From Bigelowiella natans CCMP2755 (Eukaryota > Protista > Cercozoa), in assembly GCA_000320545.1 (NCBI GenBank), contig ADNK01001796.1, forward strand, positions 1 to 38,326: 38,326 nucleotides of DNA. Direction: 5' to 3'. The notes beneath the pieces are model-generated. The model made no database searches. It was not told where the DNA came from and saw only the letters and a program-made list of their open reading frames with translations. Position 1 is the stretch's first letter. Every line of letters starts with the position of its first letter. Shown here piece by piece: positions 29,150 through 38,326 of the stretch. Both the position numbers and the translations under genes were made by a program.

Positions 29150-31427
29150 ATGTCTCATAGTCGTTTTCAAGCTCTATTTCGTAAAATGACTGGTGAGCTC
29201 TCTGTTAGTTTTGGTTGTTGTTGTTGTTGTTGTTGTTGCGACTGGTGTTGCGATTGCCGATGGGATGTGAGATATTTGATGATGATGATGCCGATGATGA
29301 TGATGCTCTATTCCTAGTAACATGTAGTACAAATAACAATGAGGAAATTTCCTAGAACAAGCAGAAGAGTGTTTTCCTCTGCCTCATCCTCTCCCCATTC
29401 CTACCATTCCCAGCAACATGTAGTACAAATGATGATGAGGAAACTTCCTATAAAAAGCAGCAGAGTGTTTTCCTCTGCCTCACCCTCTCCCCATTATTCC
29501 TCAGATTTGCTGCTAGCCTACTCAGATCCAGAAGGAGGAGGAGGAACGAACGAACGAACAAACGAACGACCATCGGACGGACGAAGGAACAAACAACAAT
29601 CTCCAATTTCCTATCTCCACTTAATTGTACTTACAACAACTTCCTCTAAATGGCCACCGCGCATCAGGTCACCCTTGCACCTAAGTTGGATATCCTAACT
29701 AGCTCCTTCATTGACAGATGATCATCACAGGAATGTTGTTATACTACACATTGTAGTTTTGCCATTTTTCTCACTAGCCCTAGTACTTCTCATCCGGAGG
29801 AAGAACCCAAAGTAAATATCCTTCCTTCACACAGGTGGCACTGGTGCCTCTACACGTGCCTGTGAACAAGGTTTTGCAGTAGCAAGATGGTGTAGTGGAA
29901 TGAGTGACGATGAACATTTGCCTGTGGTTCTTTCTAAAGTTTATGAATATAAATTCATCGGTAGGATATTGTTAACTTTCTGCAAGGGGCATTGAAAGAA
30001 CACCCTAGAGCCTGGATAACTTCATGCTCTGGGGTTCTTTCCACAGTGAAATTCCGTGATGATAGTGGTGAGACTTCTCATGAGCAAAAGAGAAAAGAGA
30101 AAGATTCATCCGAGGCGGAGAAGCAAGGGTCTTTCCACGTCGTCTCTCTGCAGCTTCTGAACTCAAAAAATGGTCATTAGTATGGCTTGCTTCCACCACG
30201 TATATAAATATTGCATGAATAATCACATAAGGGTGCGCTGTTGAGTATTCTACCCAACGCTTAATTGCATAAACATCTCATCTCATGTTTTCCCTCCTTT
30301 CGCCACTGTTCTTAGAAAAGGCTCAGCGAACCACCCTCCAGGTAAATTATCACGACTTTCTGCTGTATGTTCAGTTGATGAAAATTGAAACTTTGTGGTA
30401 TCTTCCTATACAATGTATTGTTAATAAAAATCAATTCTTTGTGATGTCTTTCTATCAAATCCACCTAAAATAACGTCGAGTGCATTCAGGCTGTAGTGCT
30501 GGATCTTGGTCAAAATCAAAATGTAATGGGGGGTATTCTAGTTGGGGGAAGTGTGGCACCAGGAGGCCTAACAGTAACACTAGCGATAAACGGCAGCAGC
30601 AGCACTTCGACTCTTCCAGCTGCTACATCCGCTGAGCTCTCCCTCCACCCTAATGTTGAGGAGAAGGGGCGACCCGAGGAAAATGGCAAGAGTGAGAGCG
30701 TCGATGGTGGTGCCGTAATCCCACCTCCCCCCCCTGTTGGAAATCTGCTACCTCCGCCACCTCCTCCATTAGGTCATCGATGTGTGAAGATCTCGTTACA
30801 TTGACGACGACGACGACGACAACAACAACAATAATAATAATAATGATGCATTAGTACTGTCGAAACTCCCACATGTGATCATCATCGTACATATTTTTTC
30901 AAATCGTTGTTTTATTAAAAACGGTGTCACTTAGGATCTGGATTGGCTCCTCCTCCCCCTTCGGTCAAGTCACAGCAAAAGAATCAGCCAAAGGCAAATG
31001 ACAGTATTCATATTAATGATGACATCGAGGGGGTTGCAGGAAGCGGATTAAGGCCTTCAGGTACGTTTCTTCTTCTTCTACTACTAGTAGTTGCTGTTTT
31101 CTGCTGATACCACCATCACGAGCATGGTATCATCACCATTTCCTTGTGTTCCTTCCTCGCTTCTTTCTTCCTTCTCTGCGGCTTTACCATCTATCAATTA
31201 CAGTTTCTCATATAATTTCATTTGCAATTGTAAAGACGAAATCACCAAACAAACTAACTAATGTGCTGCTACTGTTTTGTCCTCAGATTTGCGGAAAAGG
31301 GAGAAGAACAAGAAGAACAAGACAAAGAGATCATTTAAGTACAACTTGTTAACATTTACGTTGTTGTGCTACACTTCTACTTCTCTAGCATTTACACAAA
31401 TCCGAGATTGCTGTAAGAATACTACAG

Positions 31428-31464
<37 letters not shown>

Positions 31465-33002
31465 TAGAGCATTTCTGATTGACTCAAAATCACTCCTTGT
31501 CCTCACCACCTACTATTCTTCTACTAACCCAATACTGCCTTATTAGGATAGTACGAAATAAATCCAAAAAAGGGAGGGGAAAGACAAATAAACAAGATGA
31601 CGTCTTCAATCCAAACGATACCAAATTGGATGTGGATAGGCTTTTTTATGAATTCAGGAAGGTACTAGTAATAAGACAATACTACTGTGCTGCTGCTGCT
31701 GCTGCTGCTGCTGCTGTGGGTATGAGCATGGAAGAAATTTAATAATACACAGAGCTGATATAATGTATATGGATAATCTAATCAATATTTATTTCTAAGT
31801 GGCTATGTGTATATCATCATCATCATCATCATCATCATCATTATCTCCCTTCTTCCTGGTTGGCTTGTAGTTACTCCTGAAGAATGAAATGCCGGCAGAA
31901 AAGGTGGTACGAGTAGTCGTCATAGTAGTAGTAAGGATGGTGCACAACAACTAAGAGTTGGCAAGAACAAAGACCTTCACTTGTACTACAACTACTACTT
32001 TTTACAGGAAGAATGGTTTGACCCTAAGCTAGTAACAGCTATCCGCTCAGCTGACGTTAACACAGGATCAGGCTACGTTTTAGAGACACAAGTGAGGATG
32101 ATGATGATGATGATGATGGTAGCTTGTTGGTGGTGGTTTGACGATGAATTGTTATCATATGCATACAGCTTCGTGACATCGTAGCAGATTGGGTACTTGA
32201 CCAAAGTGCCTTCTACCAGCTAAGGTATTAGGAGGTGTAGTAGTAGTAGTAGCAGCAGCAGTAGTAGCAGTAGTATTTCGGTGGAGATGAGGTAAGGAAT
32301 GAAAGGGAGGGGGAAGAAGGGCTCTTGTCCATTTATGGTCATTATCATCTTCATCCTCCTCCTCCTCTCATGGTGAATCATTCTAAGTAAGAATGAGCAC
32401 AATTTTACGAGTGGTAGCTGACTGACTGACTGCCCACCACATTACCAACAATCGCTCACTTAGATTTCTTACGCGCCATGTCACTCGTATGGTGATAGAA
32501 CGCTTCCTAAACAAATATCCCAAGGTCATCAATCACTGTTGTGTGCTGTCATCGTCGTCGTCGTATGTATCAATGTATTATTCAACAAATCATCATGTGC
32601 TGCTGCTGCTGCAACTATAAATATTACTACTACTACTACTACTACTTCTGCAGGTGAAAATTGACACATTGCTGGTAGATCCTGCTGTCGCTCGTATGAA
32701 TGAGATCCTTGACCGGTATAAACTACTACTACTACTACTACTACTAATGCTAATATTTGATGATGATGATGATAAAAACAACAACAGGTATAAAGGAGAG
32801 GGTGTTGACTCTCGAATTCGCATATTGGACAAAGACGCCTCACTGCAAGCGATTGTCCCATACGTTAAAAAGCCTAGACAGACAGTCATTGCCCTTGATT
32901 TTGATCAAACAATTACCCTGGTATGTAGGTGATGATGATGGTGATGATGATGATGATGATGATGATTATGCTCATGACGATGAAGCTTCTACATATTCCT
33001 GG

Positions 33003-33052
<50 letters not shown>

Positions 33053-33401
33053 GCCATTCATGTACCATCTCGTCAGACTTTGGTAATGCAATAAACTGTA
33101 GGTGGAGAAGGCAAAACCAGGACATAAAAAGGCTCGGAAGAGCTTAAAATTGAGAGGTTCTGATGTCATGTGTGCATCCCCCTCCTCCTACCCCCCCCCC
33201 CCCTCCCTCCTCCTCCTCGAATATTCAAGTTAGTATTCCGTCCTTTGCAAACATTGATGCTGCATGCAAGTTTTTGTGAATAATTTTGATATTTTGACAT
33301 CATTGTTTTCCTCCTCCTCTCCTTCATTCCTTCTCCCTCTCTACATTGCAGGTGGTGTTGAGTCTAAAAGAGCATTAGAATCGCTTGTCGATCAGGTACT
33401 A

Positions 33402-33436
<35 letters not shown>

Positions 33437-33812
33437 GAGACGCACACGCGTTGTGATTTCACGTGCACTGCCCCCCCCCCCCCCCTCTCGCACACACATT
33501 CAAATGTACACGCGCGCATTCTCCAATTTGTACCCAGCTCTCTGTCTTCCTCGACTATGTTGTATATGTAGATATAAATATCTCCTTTAACTTCTTACTG
33601 CTGCAATGCTCACATGAGATTTGTCGTGATACTACTTGATTCATGAATCGTTACCAACCCTTCATTTGGCTGTATTATGTACTATTGCGCATTATTATGA
33701 TAATAATAATAATAATTATTATTATTATTATTGTTATTGTAGGGTGCTATTTGCTGCATTGCCACCGCTCAGACACCTGGTGTAGAGGTAGCAGCATTAT
33801 TCATAGTTGTAC

Positions 33813-33846
<34 letters not shown>

Positions 33847-33863
33847 GTGATCAGATTGTTGAG

Positions 33864-33902
<39 letters not shown>

Positions 33903-34360
33903 GTCATCATCATCATCATCATTATCATCATTTAGACTTTGCTGCTGCTGCCTCAAACAACCCTATTAGTATTACTATTATTATTATTATTATTATTAGC
34001 CTTTGTTTCTCTATTATCAAGGGCCTCACCGTTGTCGTCTACTATTTGGTTATTTATCTACTTTTCCCCTACCACCACCAGCAGCTGCATGTGTGTGATG
34101 TGATTATTTAAGTATATTATAGCAATCATCATCATCAATGGTCATCATCCTCTTCTTTTTCGTCGTCGTATTCGTTACTGGTAGGTGATGATAAGTTTGG
34201 TTCAAGAAATACGACACCTTGGCCTTGCACGGGTATGATGACGGTGATGATTGATGTTGTCATTACTTTCTTTTGAGTATGCTATTATAAGAGGAAGAAT
34301 AGCACTATATGTGGATTGGTATATAATGACGAATTGTTGTCGTCGTGACCTGACATCATC

Positions 34361-34396
<36 letters not shown>

Positions 34397-34763
34397 GCCT
34401 CTTCAATTCTTCATCTTCTCTTCCTCAAAAGGTTTTCAATGTCGAGCTCTTTGACCAGGAGCCAATAAAATCTTTAATAAAGGTAATAATAGTAAAAGAA
34501 GAAGAGGAAGGGAGGGGGGGGGGGTTATTAGCGGGATGATACTAATCATTGTGTTGATAAAAGTAGCTGCTATGAATATAGCTAGATATTGACCATCAGT
34601 ATCTTCTTTTCTTTTCCTTCTTTTTTGTTCTTCACTTATGATGATAGCACTAATGGTTGAGTACTACTACTATTACTACTACTACTACTACTACTACTAC
34701 TTACGATAGAGTTGGGGAATGAATGAGACGATGAGTTTGAATAAACTCACTATCAAATTAGGT

Positions 34764-34795
<32 letters not shown>

Positions 34796-35206
34796 TATCG
34801 TCGCTTTCTTCATCACTTATATCACGTTGTCTTGGTAGCCTTTATTCATGACTAATAGCATCATAAACTTGTTGCTGGCTTGATAGTCGTTCTGATGTCG
34901 CTGAACACCAGTCGAAAACCAAAAGACATGGAGCGGATTGGTAACTATCAACTGTAATTAAATGTGCATTCTAGATGATGATGATAGTAATAATGATGAT
35001 GATGATGATGATGATAACTACTTTCTCATGCCGCACCTCACGACAAAGTCCGTATTAGCCAAGTGCTGCTAAATTGTTGCTTACTCCTACTAACTAGAAA
35101 TATTATTAGGTTACTCCATGCTTAAATTCGATACCAAATCGGACAGCAAGAATAAGTAGTTTACTCATATGTTTATTTGCCTATCTCATGTTCTCAAGAA
35201 TGAATT

Positions 35207-35237
<31 letters not shown>

Positions 35238-37467
35238 GTTCCATTACCATGAAAATAACAATGCAGAGCATTACACATTTATTGACACGTCGTGTTGTGG
35301 TTCTATTCATGTTCTCCAAGGTCTTCTTCTTCTTCTTCACCTTTGCGGCGTTGTCCATCCGTAAAGTTCCAATTATTTCATGACGCGACAGATAATCCAT
35401 CATTAGAGGTAGATAGTGTAGGTTAGGTTAGATTAGCCAATTCGTTTTATTAGCATTGTTGTTGCTTAGTAGTAATGACAATACTGCTGCTGATAATAAC
35501 AGAAATGTTGGGGAGCGGTACACGAGCTGAAAGGTAATTATCGTTGTTATTCTTCTTGTTGTTTTTGTTTTTGTTATTGTTAATATAATTGCAAGATATG
35601 TAGCAGTAGCAGTAGCAGTAGCAGTAGTAGTATAGTAGTAGTACCGTTCGGTCATCACTCAAGGGAGATGATTCTGTGTTGTGAAGAAGAAGAAGAAGAA
35701 GAAGTAGTAGTAGTAGTAGTAGTAAGAGAAAAGAAACAGCTCTACCTACATGCTCATTGTCCAAAACCATGCAGCATCTAGTGTTAGATAGCATTAGTAG
35801 TACTAGTAGTTGTAGGCGGTCAGATTTGTTTCTTTCTGTGTAATCGTAATGTTTGTTGCTCGTATAGCTTAAAATACGAGTAGTTATGTGTTGTTGCTAT
35901 GTTCTGCTGACTTCATCAATTATTTAATTTCTCCCCCCCCCCCCTCCTCGATCCTCCTCCTCCCCTTGCTATCATTATCGTCGTCATTATCACAGGGGTA
36001 TATGAGAAAGATGGGAACAACGACGACAACAACACTGGCGGTGCTGCTGGTGATGGATCAGGCTGGAAGAAGAATAATAACATTGATGGTAGTAGTGATG
36101 TGATGGGCTCTCCTATCTCCAATCCTACCTTACAGAGACAGAATTCTCTCGCTGCTGAAGGTAAATCAACGTGAATGATAATGATGATGGTAATGCTGAT
36201 GATAGCAATATTGGTGGTGGTGGTGGTGATAATAAAGAGGAGAAGTTCTTCCTTTGCGTCGTTTACTATTGTTCTCAAGATAAGATATCAATCGATCGAT
36301 CGTGCGAGGAGGATGATGCATCCACTCATAGCTAACATCCAACTCTACTACTACAACAGAATAAAGTAATATGATACATGTGTTTTATACTACTGCAACT
36401 ACCCATTCCATCAATTAGGCGACGTAACAATGTGCACAGTACGTTGCATGAAGGCATATGCTGAAAGGACCAAAGAGGTAGCTAGGTAGGTAGGTAGGTA
36501 GGTAGGTAGGTCGTTGTTATGTTATTAAAAGAAGGACGAGGGAGGACAACTGCTTTCCGTCATGGATTGGTGGATTAGGTTAGCAGTGTGGTGTGTCTTG
36601 TTATTGTAATACTGCTGCTGCTGCTGCTACTGCTACTGCTACTGCTGCCGGATGATCAGCTTCGACTAGCATTCCTTAAAAGCGTTAATGCACCCAAGAT
36701 ACCAAAGGTAGGTGTGTAAGAATACACTTGCAACTAACTACCCTATATCCTTCTCTTGCACTTCTTCTTGCTTGCTGCTGTTACGGGGATACACACACCT
36801 ACCACACACACACAGACAATGTGCTGCTGCTAGCATTGAATGAATCAATGAACCAACCAATCAACAGGTCTTTATAGAAGAAAAGATCAAAAAGCGAGAG
36901 GCGGACAAATCTAGACGTATCCAAGCAGGTAGTAGCAGGAATGATACGATAGATGAGTACCGAGTAAGGAAAAGGAAAGTAGAGAGGAGGACATCACGAT
37001 GAGGAGGAAGATTTATATATAGAGTACTTGTTATTGATTGATGATACTGACGATGATGATGATGATGATGATGACCAGGAGAGCTCTCGGAATTTCCACC
37101 TGAGGAAGAATCAAAGGAGGAAAAGGAGCTAAGAGAGGCAGAAGAAGACCGCATTCGGTACTACTAGTAGTAGTAGTAGTTGTTGTTGTTGTTGTCGTTG
37201 TAGTTATAGTAGTGGTGGTGGTGGTGGTGGTAGGTGTTGGCTTCTTCTGATTTGATTGATTTGAATGCAGTAGTAAATGCATGATGATTGGGTTATCAAT
37301 GGTTGGATGACCAGCATTCCTTATTTGTACCTATATAACGATGGTGATAACTATGATGATAATCATGATGATAGTAATGATGATAATGATGATCGATCGA
37401 TCATCACGTTATAGCATTCAGAATCAGTGTTGATTTTTTATTGTCACAATATATACATGTATATATC

Positions 37468-37507
<40 letters not shown>

Positions 37508-37764
37508 CTACCCCTCTCGTTTCTATATGTTCCGCGTTTGGTGGTTTTATCTTCCTATTTATTTAAAAAGAAGGGAGAAGTATTCCAACAACATATACCA
37601 GCATCAGCATCAGCATCATCATCATGCATATTGGTTGCTATTATTAGGTATGAGGAGGAAGCTATACGTGTTAAAGAAGAGGTAAACAAGATACCACTAA
37701 TTAATCATCTTTGTAATATTATTCTACTAATCTACAATATTTAGACCCAATGATATATGTGTAC

Positions 37765-37814
<50 letters not shown>

Positions 37815-38116
37815 TATATAAATAGGATGTCATATGTTAATCGTCGTCGTATGTAATTCAGGAAGCAAAGAATCACTGGTCAAACAGACTTTTCATTAGT
37901 GCGGATGGAAAAGGTGCTGCCTATCGCTAATGATACTCATAATCATGATGGTGATGGTGGTGGTGGTGGTGATGTAAAAGAGAAATAGCATGCATGATCA
38001 AAATCATCATCATCATCATCATCATCATGCACTAAAAAGGTCTCTTGGATGCTGATACGATTGATAAGATGACCAAGGTATTATTGCAGGGAGAGAAGAA
38101 ATAACACAGAGAGAGA

Positions 38117-38156
<40 letters not shown>

Positions 38157-38175
38157 GTTTATTGTAACATATGTG

Positions 38176-38221
<46 letters not shown>

Positions 38222-38326
38222 CAGCAGCGTTGATATGATGATATGTTGTTAATGAAGATGTGAATGATATTTGATAGGATGTGCTCAAAGAGGCCGGAGT
38301 ACCTCCTTCAAAGTTAAAGACACAGT
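29150..38326 (+). CDS. Large multi-exon protein: unknown N-terminus, polyproline segment, HAD-like phosphatase N-half, then a DIRS-type tyrosine recombinase (phage-integrase fold) domain; truncated by window end
   Basis: Exons join in phase at GT-AG sites: ...-32920, 33102-33156, 33352-33395, 33743-33787, 34185-34232, 34432-34482, 34710-34761, 34887-34940, 35110-35155, 35321-35408, 35503-35533, 35996-36160, 36419-36477, 36660-36707, 36868-36928, 37079-37157, 37648-37681, 37862-37913, 38040-38077, 38278-end. HAD motif I VIALDFDQTITL and motif II ICCIATAQ. Recombinase-like blocks SWGMNETMSLNKLTIKLVVLMSLNTSRKPKDMERI, DVTMCTVRCMKAYAERTKELR and RLFISADGKGLLDADTIDKMTKDVLKEAGVPPSKLKT. The 5' exons and the start (MSHSRFQALFRKMT) are less certain. 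Confidence 0.8.
29310..29495. repeat. Diverged 90-bp tandem duplication (period 96) in or near the first intron of the HAD-recombinase gene
   Basis: attcctagtaacatgtagtacaaataacaatgaggaaatttcc...ctctccccatt (29310-29399) versus attcccagcaacatgtagtacaaatgatgatgaggaaacttcc...ctctccccatt (29406-29495). Confidence 0.9.

What the first reader, a model, noticed from the sequence alone, without database searches (positions are those of the whole stretch)
34432..38326. DIRS-type tyrosine recombinase domain hidden in 15 micro-exons and fused to a HAD phosphatase: candidate domesticated recombinase
Seen: phase-consistent exons give VFNVELFDQEPIKSLIK-SWGMNETMSLNKLTIKL-VVLMSLNTSRKPKDMERI-GYSMLKF…GDVTMCTVRCMKAYAERTKE-LR…HWSNRLFISADGK-GLLDADTIDKMTK-DVLKEAGVPPSKLKT. 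Established (consensus recalled from memory): DIRS-retroelement tyrosine recombinases carry, in the same order, WDv..vl..l.sWg.N..Lsl..Lt.Kl..Ll.l....R.sdl, D..lCPVr.l..Y..RT..lR and LFis.......s..Ti....k.vl..aGi....f..HS.R. Inference: an element-derived recombinase has been captured in frame into a host gene. It is intron-rich, has no adjacent RT/RNase H or terminal repeats in the window, and carries two long low-complexity or charged insertions. It is invisible in the six-frame ORF track. I know of no described HAD + tyrosine recombinase architecture.
Basis: partly seen in the sequence, partly recalled or inferred. Interest (0 to 1): 0.85.

Follow-up and report, generated by a model that had tools for sequence, protein, structure and literature searches.

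The report
Recombinase-fold domain nested inside a phosphatase
The 15 tiny exons are real and expressed: they encode a catalytically dead fragment of a tyrosine-recombinase fold inserted in the middle of a HAD phosphatase domain, in a single-copy gene of the alga Bigelowiella natans with relatives in other protists. This domain combination appears undescribed.

Summary
The window is a whole contig of Bigelowiella natans. A transcript-derived protein, P0003 (957 aa, cDNA locus L020), maps exactly onto window 29517-38312 as 33 exons, and all 32 introns are GT-AG. Spliced RNA-type contigs from three studies show the same junctions.

- **Truncated and inactive.** Only the first two thirds of the catalytic domain is present. 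It stops before HxxR and has no catalytic tyrosine.
- **Nested, not appended.** It sits between HAD motifs II and III. Motifs III and IV lie beyond the contig end.
- **A host gene.** It is single copy, under purifying selection and shared with the amoebozoan Copromyxa and environmental eukaryotes. Relatives with the same HAD core but no insert exist.
- **Untested.** A specifically DIRS origin could not be tested, and the function is inferred.

I found no description of this architecture.

The parts
29517..38312 (+). The part of the gene inside the window: 33 exons (5' UTR plus codons 1-793 of the 957-codon protein P0003 = jgi Bigna1 89029). The rest lies in an assembly gap and on the next contig, C1940.
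   Evidence: Exact cDNA-to-genome chain; all introns GT-AG. Spliced RNA contigs. C1940 carries residues 847-957.
29650..29652 (+). Start codon of P0003 and P0001.
   Evidence: MATAHQ maps at 29650; gene at 134-3007 in L020.
29835..30772 (+). Exons 2-5: N-terminal PCC/DUF296-like domain (P0003 residues about 12-121), found in the chlorarachniophyte members only.
   Evidence: PF03479 E 8e-4 to 0.044, all below Pfam's cut-off. PDB 2nmu/2hx0 E 0.055 with the A1 profile.
32788..32920 (+). Exon 14 with HAD motif I (DFDQT at 32897-32911; Asp nucleophile D424).
   Evidence: The motif is invariant in all 15 family members.
33743..33787 (+). Exon 17 with HAD motif II (Thr472 at 33764-33766, in IATAQTP).
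   Evidence: T and A invariant.
34432..38312 (+).
   Evidence: Homologous to P0006 residues 139-330, which match Cre, XerH and XerA.
34913..34915 (+). Arg539 codon (in LNTSR), the only catalytic-type recombinase residue invariant across the family. Probable equivalent of Cre Arg173 (Arg I).
   Evidence: Invariant in the A3 alignment. Equivalence is inferred from offsets in the structural ranges: P0006 139-327 against Cre 133-292, with R178 in P0006. No residue-level superposition was available.
35996..36160 (+). Exon 25: N/D/G/S-rich low-complexity expansion in the loop after the beta-hairpin. Long in chlorarachniophytes, short or absent in other members.
   Evidence: Alignment A4. It has the highest pN of all segments.
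36419..36477 (+). Exon 26: helix with the conserved pattern C-x-V...Y-x-x-R-T-x-x-x-R.
   Evidence: C, Y, T and R are invariant among the seven insert-bearing sequences of A3. P0013 diverges here in A4. L028 reads ACPVRALRAYLEHTRGLR.
36868..37681 (+). Exons 28-30: E/K/R-rich charged helix, a chlorarachniophyte-specific expansion.
   Evidence: Alignment A4. Predicted as a long helix in the first AF2 model.
37862..38312 (+). Exons 31-33: RLFIS strand and the following helix (TIDKMTKDVLKEAG), the last elements of the recombinase-like fold before the chain returns to the HAD core.
38313..38326 (+). First 14 bases of intron 33 (GT donor), cut by the contig end.
   Evidence: RNA loose end at 38314. 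P0003 compared with P0001.

Best explanation
The locus is one single-copy, expressed nuclear gene of Bigelowiella natans. Its product is a HAD-superfamily phosphatase with a subfamily III type core, which normally has no cap. Between HAD motifs II and III, where C2-type caps are inserted, it carries a nested domain of about 310 residues derived from the catalytic domain of a tyrosine recombinase. The nested domain keeps the fold from its first helix through Arg I, the beta-hairpin and the next helices. It ends just before the HxxR box and lacks the nucleophilic tyrosine, so it cannot recombine DNA. All four HAD motifs are intact, so the phosphatase is probably active.

The most likely working model is inferred, not shown. 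The recombinase-derived module acts as the substrate-recognition or cap module of the phosphatase and most plausibly binds nucleic acid. This would parallel other catalytically dead recombinase folds (DUF3504 domains; Ndc10 domain II from my own knowledge). It would aim the HAD active site at a phosphate on DNA or on a chromatin-bound substrate.

The architecture is old. It is shared by chlorarachniophytes, the amoebozoan Copromyxa and uncultured eukaryotes, while close relatives keep the same HAD core without the insert.
For: Gene and splicing: exact exon-by-exon match of P0003/L020, all introns GT-AG. Spliced contigs in 3 studies link the HAD and insert exons.

Single copy: P0003 against the whole genome hits only C1941 and the adjoining C1940, apart from one marginal hit on C3604 (E 0.0015, residues 173-297, outside the conserved region).

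HAD:
- Motifs DFDQT, TAQ, NKPE and VDDNSDN are invariant or nearly so.
- HAD-IIIC matches in 12/15 members, HAD-IIIA in 10/15, phrog_1238 in 13/15 and DUF2608 in 7/15, all below their cut-offs.

Recombinase fold:
- AF2 model of P0006: pLDDT 88.4, pTM 0.80, no templates.
- Flp, Cre and lambda Int head the Foldseek list.
- Atlas shape neighbours include eukaryotic PF00589 clusters.
- Atlas feature neighbours of the insert alone are DUF3504, PF00589, NDC10_II and DUF3435.

Insert as a gained module: P0009-P0012 have the same HAD core with a short linker or none in its place.

Constraint: pN 0.29-0.38 in the insert against saturated pS of about 0.85, similar to the HAD N-terminal half.

Hints of nucleic-acid binding: PCC-like N-terminus in chlorarachniophytes, and a C2H2 finger in P0007 and P0014, all sub-threshold.
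Against: - No sequence profile (Pfam, NCBIfam, PHROGs, PDB sequences) links the insert to any integrase family.
- hhalign against the single sequences of Cre and lambda Int gave probability 0.1.
- The fold evidence rests on a model of the orthologue P0006, built from 15 sequences. The model of the chlorarachniophyte protein itself was unusable (pLDDT 41).
- Atlas feature scores of 0.83-0.90 are leads by the tool's own calibration.
- The Arg I equivalence is by offset, not by superposition.
- Nothing tested phosphatase activity, DNA binding or the substrate.
- All HAD family hits are below their curated cut-offs.
Confidence: 0.8

Rival explanations
1. The insert is a lineage-grown HAD C2 cap with no evolutionary link to tyrosine recombinases. 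The resemblance is a common alpha+beta arrangement or a bias of the predicted model, and the motif likeness is chance.
Confidence: 0.12
2. It is a working tyrosine recombinase or part of a mobile element (Crypton or DIRS-like) that happens to lie in or next to a HAD gene.
For: Recombinase fold. The recalled motif pattern resembles element-borne recombinases.
Against: Single copy. There are 32 spliceosomal introns and orthologues in other protists. The fold ends before HxxR, no tyrosine region exists and the chain returns to HAD motifs III and IV. The His of GHPVE is Asn in P0004. No PF00589 match turned up in the six-frame scan of the genome. I did not search the window separately for reverse transcriptase or terminal repeats.
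Confidence: 0.02
3. The HAD part and the recombinase-like part are two neighbouring genes joined by a faulty gene model.
For: Logan contigs break between exons 26 and 27, and the 3' contig has higher word depth. Gene model P0001 is wrong at the contig end.
Against: One Logan contig joins the HAD motif I exon to exons 19-26. cDNA L020 spans all 33 exons and continues to HAD motifs III and IV in one frame. The same order is seen in intron-free transcripts of other species (L021, L022, L025, L026, P0006-P0008).
Confidence: 0.01

Closest known systems
DUF3504 domains (PF12012) of KCTD1, ZMYM2-4, QRICH1, KIAA1958 and WOC: Crypton-derived domesticated tyrosine recombinases (PMC3212892)
   Same: A tyrosine-recombinase fold kept in a conserved host gene. 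[quoted passage not shown] DUF3504 is the second-nearest named cluster by ESM Atlas features (0.89).
   Different: PF12012 does not match. Here the fold is cut short before box II, and it is nested inside another enzyme's domain instead of standing as a separate domain. The hosts are protists, not animals.
Canonical tyrosine recombinases (Cre, XerH, XerA, lambda Int, Flp; Pfam PF00589)
   Different: No HxxR, no His/Trp III, no tyrosine and no core-binding domain. No profile match. The beta-hairpin lysine is not invariant.
DIRS, Ngaro and Crypton element recombinases
   Same: Atlas shape neighbours are animal PF00589 clusters of the kind that such elements encode.
   Different: No reverse transcriptase or terminal repeats were looked for in the window. 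The gene is single copy. No DIRS sequence was available to compare, so the subtype is open. Atlas feature hits point to Crypton-related families (DUF3504, DUF3435) rather than DIRS.
Ndc10 domain II (PF16787), a recombinase-like fold in a yeast kinetochore protein
   Same: A catalytically dead tyrosine-recombinase fold that, from my own knowledge, is reused for DNA binding. It appears among the Atlas feature neighbours (0.85).
   Different: Different protein context. No sequence relationship was shown here.
Capless HAD subfamily III phosphatases (MDP-1, T4 and eukaryotic PNKP 3'-phosphatase, GmhB; TIGR01681, TIGR01662)
   Different: These enzymes have no cap. Here a domain of 150-310 residues is inserted between motifs II and III. 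All family scores are below their cut-offs, so this is a separate and so far unnamed HAD family.

Membership tests
Tyrosine recombinase (PF00589, DNA breaking-rejoining catalytic core) | Catalytic-domain fold | tested here: met
Tyrosine recombinase (PF00589, DNA breaking-rejoining catalytic core) | Profile match above the curated cut-off | tested here: not met
   No PF00589 or integrase model at E up to 10 in any of 15 members, nor in the six-frame scan of the genome.
Tyrosine recombinase (PF00589, DNA breaking-rejoining catalytic core) | Catalytic residues R-K-H-R-(H/W)-Y | tested here: not met
   Only the first Arg is invariant. Lys is variable, HxxR is absent (GHPVE, GNPVQ, SLRNP) and the Tyr region is replaced by HAD motifs III and IV.
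DIRS-type retroelement recombinase | Lies in an element with reverse transcriptase/RNase H and terminal repeats, in many copies | tested here: not met
   Single copy in 91 Mb. It is an intron-rich host gene with orthologues. I did not run a dedicated search for reverse transcriptase or terminal repeats.
DIRS-type retroelement recombinase | Closer in sequence to DIRS recombinases than to Crypton, Ngaro or other recombinases | not testable with these tools
   No DIRS, Ngaro or Crypton reference sequences could be obtained. The consensus in the finding is recalled, not tested.
DUF3504 (PF12012) | Profile match | tested here: not met
   No hit at the locus or in hmmscan. Only an Atlas feature score of 0.89.
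HAD superfamily phosphatase | Motifs I (DxDxT), II (T/S), III (K) and IV (DD) in order | tested here: met
   DFDQT, TAQ, NKPE and VDDNSDN are invariant or nearly so in 15 sequences. In the window only motifs I and II are present; III and IV come from the cDNA L020.
HAD superfamily phosphatase | Rossmann-like HAD core fold | tested here: met
HAD superfamily phosphatase | Profile match above the curated cut-off | tested here: not met
   Only sub-threshold hits: TIGR01681 best E 3.6e-5 (12/15 members), TIGR01662 2.2e-4 (10/15), PF11019 (7/15), PF00702 6e-4.
HAD superfamily phosphatase | Phosphatase activity | not testable with these tools
   Needs an enzyme assay.

The most novel reading that the evidence does not exclude
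The recombinase fragment and the HAD core may form one composite active site. The invariant Arg I, which in recombinases holds the scissile DNA phosphate, would present a DNA-end phosphate (a 3'-phosphate or a 3'-phosphotyrosyl-type adduct) to the HAD aspartate. That would make this an undescribed class of DNA-end-processing phosphatase, built by nesting half a transposon recombinase into a capless, PNKP-like HAD. It would be old enough to be shared by Rhizaria and Amoebozoa.
Probability: 0.15. Interest if true: 0.85.

Novelty: new variant of a known kind. Interest (0 to 1): 0.66.

Why it matters
Domesticated tyrosine recombinases are known mainly from animals (the DUF3504 genes), where they are free-standing domains. 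Here half of the recombinase catalytic fold has been spliced into the cap position of a phosphatase and then kept under selection in distant protist lineages.

This is a clear example of an enzyme gaining a new specificity module from a mobile-element protein. It defines a HAD family that none of the libraries searched here names, with and without the insert. It also gives a direct test: does the phosphatase act on DNA ends or on chromatin-bound substrates?

The case also shows that such domains can be invisible to all sequence profiles and to ORF scans, here because of 52-nt exons, and still be recovered by structure prediction.

Tried and rejected
- **Six-frame family scans.** PF00589 and PF12012 scans of the genome gave nothing at the locus. 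The one PF12012 hit (C3304, 17 bits, L009) is an unrelated gene.
- **Looking for the next exon.** The 30-nt and two shorter pieces of the RNA loose end are absent from the assembly. Residues 794-846 lie in the gap between C1941 and C1940.
- **First AF2 job.** P0002 with 5 sequences gave pLDDT 41 and was unusable.
- **Atlas feature search with the P0002 insert.** No usable hit.
- **Profile of three chlorarachniophyte inserts (A2)** against 5.8 billion proteins of 165-525 aa: nothing at E up to 10.
- **hhalign of A2 against single Cre and lambda Int.** Probability 0.1.
- **Attempt to build a diverse recombinase profile.** The viral-contig scans returned only 99-100% identical copies of lambda Int and Cre, and the two-sequence alignment A5 was too poor to use. 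I abandoned this.
- **PDB sequence-profile searches with A1, A3 and A4.** No HAD and no recombinase, only chance rows such as syntaxin and cyclin.
- **dN/dS.** Synonymous sites are saturated, so only pN against pS could be reported.
- **Earlier findings of the scan.** They gave no fetchable recombinase locus.
- **Joined exons.** The spliced protein was taken by reference from database protein P0003 and cDNA locus L020. The only window query was the stop-free stretch 32654-32920, which is two exons with an in-frame intron.
Full report
**1. What the sequence is**

The 38,326-base window is a complete contig (C1941) of a 91.4-Mb assembly in 3,736 contigs. A stop-free window stretch covering two exons and an in-frame intron (32654-32920) retrieved two proteins from 1.84 billion representatives. 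P0001 (893 aa, 97% identical) carries the source name jgi/Bigna1/89029, so the organism is Bigelowiella natans. A word-indexed search added three more:
- P0003 (957 aa, JGI transcript assembly);
- P0004 (Logan);
- P0005 (Amorphochlora amoebiformis hypothetical protein).

All work on the spliced protein used these database proteins and their cDNA loci by reference: L020, L021 and L022.

**2.

P0003 and its cDNA L020 map on the window without a missing base as 33 exons between 29517 and 38312. All 32 introns are GT-AG, with a median length of 175 nt.

RNA-type Logan contigs from three studies show ten of the junctions. One contig of 2.1-2.2 kb joins the exon carrying HAD motif I (32788-32920) to the exons from 34432 to 36477.

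One correction is needed. The terminal 'LKT' is read-through into intron 33. The exon ends at 38312, and the RNA runs on with letters that translate to WNELLGHPVE, which equals P0003 residues 794-803. That next exon is not in the assembly. Residues 847-957 are on the next contig, C1940, so residues 794-846 fall in the gap. Gene model P0001 bridges the gap wrongly and lacks about 60 residues.

**3. Architecture: nested, not appended**

The chlorarachniophyte alignment (A1) shows this order:
- a PCC/DUF296-like N-terminus (PF03479 E 8e-4, sub-threshold; PDB 2nmu E 0.055);
- a basic linker and a conserved helical region;
- HAD motif I (ALDFDQTIT) and motif II (CCI.TAQTP);
- HAD motif III (ARYNKPEA) and motif IV (FVDDNSDN).

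They are in the transcript.

**4. The family is wider and has insert-free members**

A pattern scan of metagenome contigs with A1 found five distant relatives (L025-L029, 27-41% identical) with a shorter middle part of 150-215 residues. A profile search with these found two groups:
- P0006-P0008 and P0013, 433-477 aa, which carry the insert;
- P0009-P0012, 275-322 aa, which have the same HAD core with only a short linker, or none, in place of the insert. In P0012, LFGLE is followed within a few residues by VVTLEGG.

P0006 is from the amoebozoan Copromyxa protea (EukProt transcriptome).

Across the seven insert-bearing sequences of A3, the invariant insert residues are one Arg (LNT.R) and C, Y, T and R in the pattern C-x-V...Y...T...R. 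The added P0013 diverges in the second motif. There is no conserved HxxR:
- B. natans has GHPVE;
- P0004 has GNPVQ;
- P0006 has SLRNP.

**5. Is the insert a tyrosine recombinase?**

By sequence profiles it is not detectable. There is no PF00589, PF12012, NCBIfam or PHROG integrase hit in any of 15 members at E up to 10. PDB sequence-profile searches found nothing. hhalign against single Cre and lambda Int sequences gave probability 0.1.

By structure it is.
- The first AF2 job (5 sequences) failed with pLDDT 41.
- With the 15-sequence alignment A4 the Copromyxa orthologue folded with pLDDT 88.4 and pTM 0.80, without templates.
- Foldseek's list, although weak (E 0.02-0.2), is headed by Flp, Cre/Tre and lambda integrase, together with capped HAD phosphatases.
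- Residues 139-330 of P0006 are exactly the insert.
- All three matches stop at or just before the HxxR box of the recombinase. The box positions come from my own knowledge of those enzymes.

Two further searches, both in the ESM Atlas, agree.
- Its shape search returns eukaryotic clusters, led by one in which 75% of members carry PF00589 (Arthropoda) and including a mollusc cluster with some Phage_int_SAM_1, next to bacterial DUF2608 HADs.
- Its feature search with the insert alone returns an unannotated cnidarian cluster (0.90), DUF3504/ZMYM3 (0.89), a Tyr-recombinase cluster (0.88), NDC10_II (0.85) and DUF3435 (0.83). The four annotated families belong to one clan, but all are below the tool's 0.9 line.

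The B. natans insert is homologous to the modelled one. BLASTP of P0003 against P0006 gives 9e-24 across HAD motifs I and II into the insert up to ...RIG, and 2e-15 from RLF... to the HAD C-terminus. The C.V..Y..RT helix aligns at 43% identity.

I conclude that the insert is a truncated, catalytically dead tyrosine-recombinase catalytic domain, with about 85% confidence. Its invariant Arg (B. natans R539, codon 34913-34915) sits at the offset expected for Arg I (Cre R173). I could not obtain a residue-level superposition.

**6. Not a mobile element**

- P0003 searched against the whole genome hits only this locus and its continuation, apart from one marginal hit on C3604 that lies outside the conserved region.
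- The gene has 32 spliceosomal introns and orthologues in at least two supergroups.
- Nonsynonymous differences in the insert (pN 0.29-0.38) are far below the saturated synonymous differences (pS about 0.85). They are similar to the HAD N-terminal half, which has pN 0.25-0.34.
- The low-complexity exon 25 and the charged helix (exons 28-30) are chlorarachniophyte-specific expansions of loops.

**7. How it most likely works**

Shown: an intact HAD motif set on a subfamily III type core (HAD-IIIC in 12/15 members, HAD-IIIA in 10/15, phrog_1238 in 13/15, all sub-threshold), with a recombinase-fold domain at the position between motifs II and III where C2 caps are inserted.

Inferred: the recombinase-derived domain serves as the specificity module of an active phosphatase. 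Four points lead me to favour a nucleic-acid or chromatin-bound substrate:
- capless HAD-III enzymes such as MDP-1 and PNKP act on macromolecules (own knowledge);
- the only retained catalytic-type residue is the phosphate-binding Arg I;
- the lineage-specific N-termini are DNA-binding types, a PCC-like domain or a single C2H2 finger (all sub-threshold).

The strongest version of this idea, a composite active site for DNA-end phosphates, is speculative.

**8. Comparison and novelty**

The closest known case is the Crypton-derived DUF3504 domain of animal genes, which also lost the tyrosine and the second arginine (PMC3212892). The differences here are truncation, nesting inside another catalytic domain, protist hosts and no profile match.

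Full-text searches found no paper that describes a combined recombinase and HAD architecture (tyrosine recombinase with haloacid dehalogenase, with Bigelowiella, or integrase-like caps in HADs).

'DIRS-type' remains a recollection. I could not bring DIRS, Ngaro or Crypton sequences into the session.

I rate this a new variant of a known kind (domesticated recombinase folds), in an architecture I did not find described.

**9. Limits**

- The fold evidence comes from a predicted model of an orthologue.
- The family is small, with about 20 sequences.
- The function is untested.
- The taxonomy of most relatives is unknown. The insert-free P0017 lies on a compact, gene-dense contig of 28-41 kb of unknown origin.

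Noticed in passing
window 38278-38326 and G000:C1940:204-1126: The public gene model jgi/Bigna1/89029 (P0001) reads through intron 33 at the contig end (LKTQ) and jumps to the next contig. It loses about 60 residues, including HAD motifs III and IV. The true sequence is in transcript-derived P0003.
   Followed up: yes
window 30514-30516 and 35352-35354 (approximate codons): P0003 differs from the window at two residues (Asn to Ile in LGQNQNV, Cys to Tyr in RRCPSV). These are presumably strain or allele differences between the transcriptome and the genome.
   Followed up: partly
window 29500-38326, introns: Almost every intron of this gene carries a long trinucleotide or dinucleotide microsatellite (ATC/ATG/TAC/CAG runs, (CA)n, (GA)n, (TA)n, poly-C or poly-G). 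Read laying skipped 14 such tracts.
   Followed up: no
window 36478-36659: Logan RNA contigs from three studies all break between exons 26 and 27, and the 3' contig has higher word depth (75 against 15 in X7). This may reflect a shorter 3' isoform or an internal start, or merely an assembly-graph break.
   Followed up: no
L026:1300-1900: In this environmental relative the reading frame continues for a further 200 residues after the HAD domain, and a second 453-aa frame follows. Weak Foldseek rows to M17 aminopeptidases appeared for the P0006 model. Possibly another fused or neighbouring domain.
   Followed up: no
L190:4910-5776 (P0017): An insert-free member of the HAD family lies on a compact, gene-dense 28-kb contig without evident introns, whose genes mostly have no Pfam hit. 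The source could be a picoeukaryote or a giant virus.
   Followed up: partly
P0007 residues 11-30; P0014 residues 37-57: Non-chlorarachniophyte members carry a single N-terminal C2H2-type zinc finger (E 0.004-0.008, sub-threshold) where B. natans has a PCC-like domain. The accessory domain differs by lineage, but both are DNA-binding types.
   Followed up: partly
ESM Atlas row 5: A haptophyte cluster (751 aa, 69 members) aligns with the model over 242 residues spanning 1-425 (TM 0.46). The family may also exist in haptophytes.
   Followed up: no
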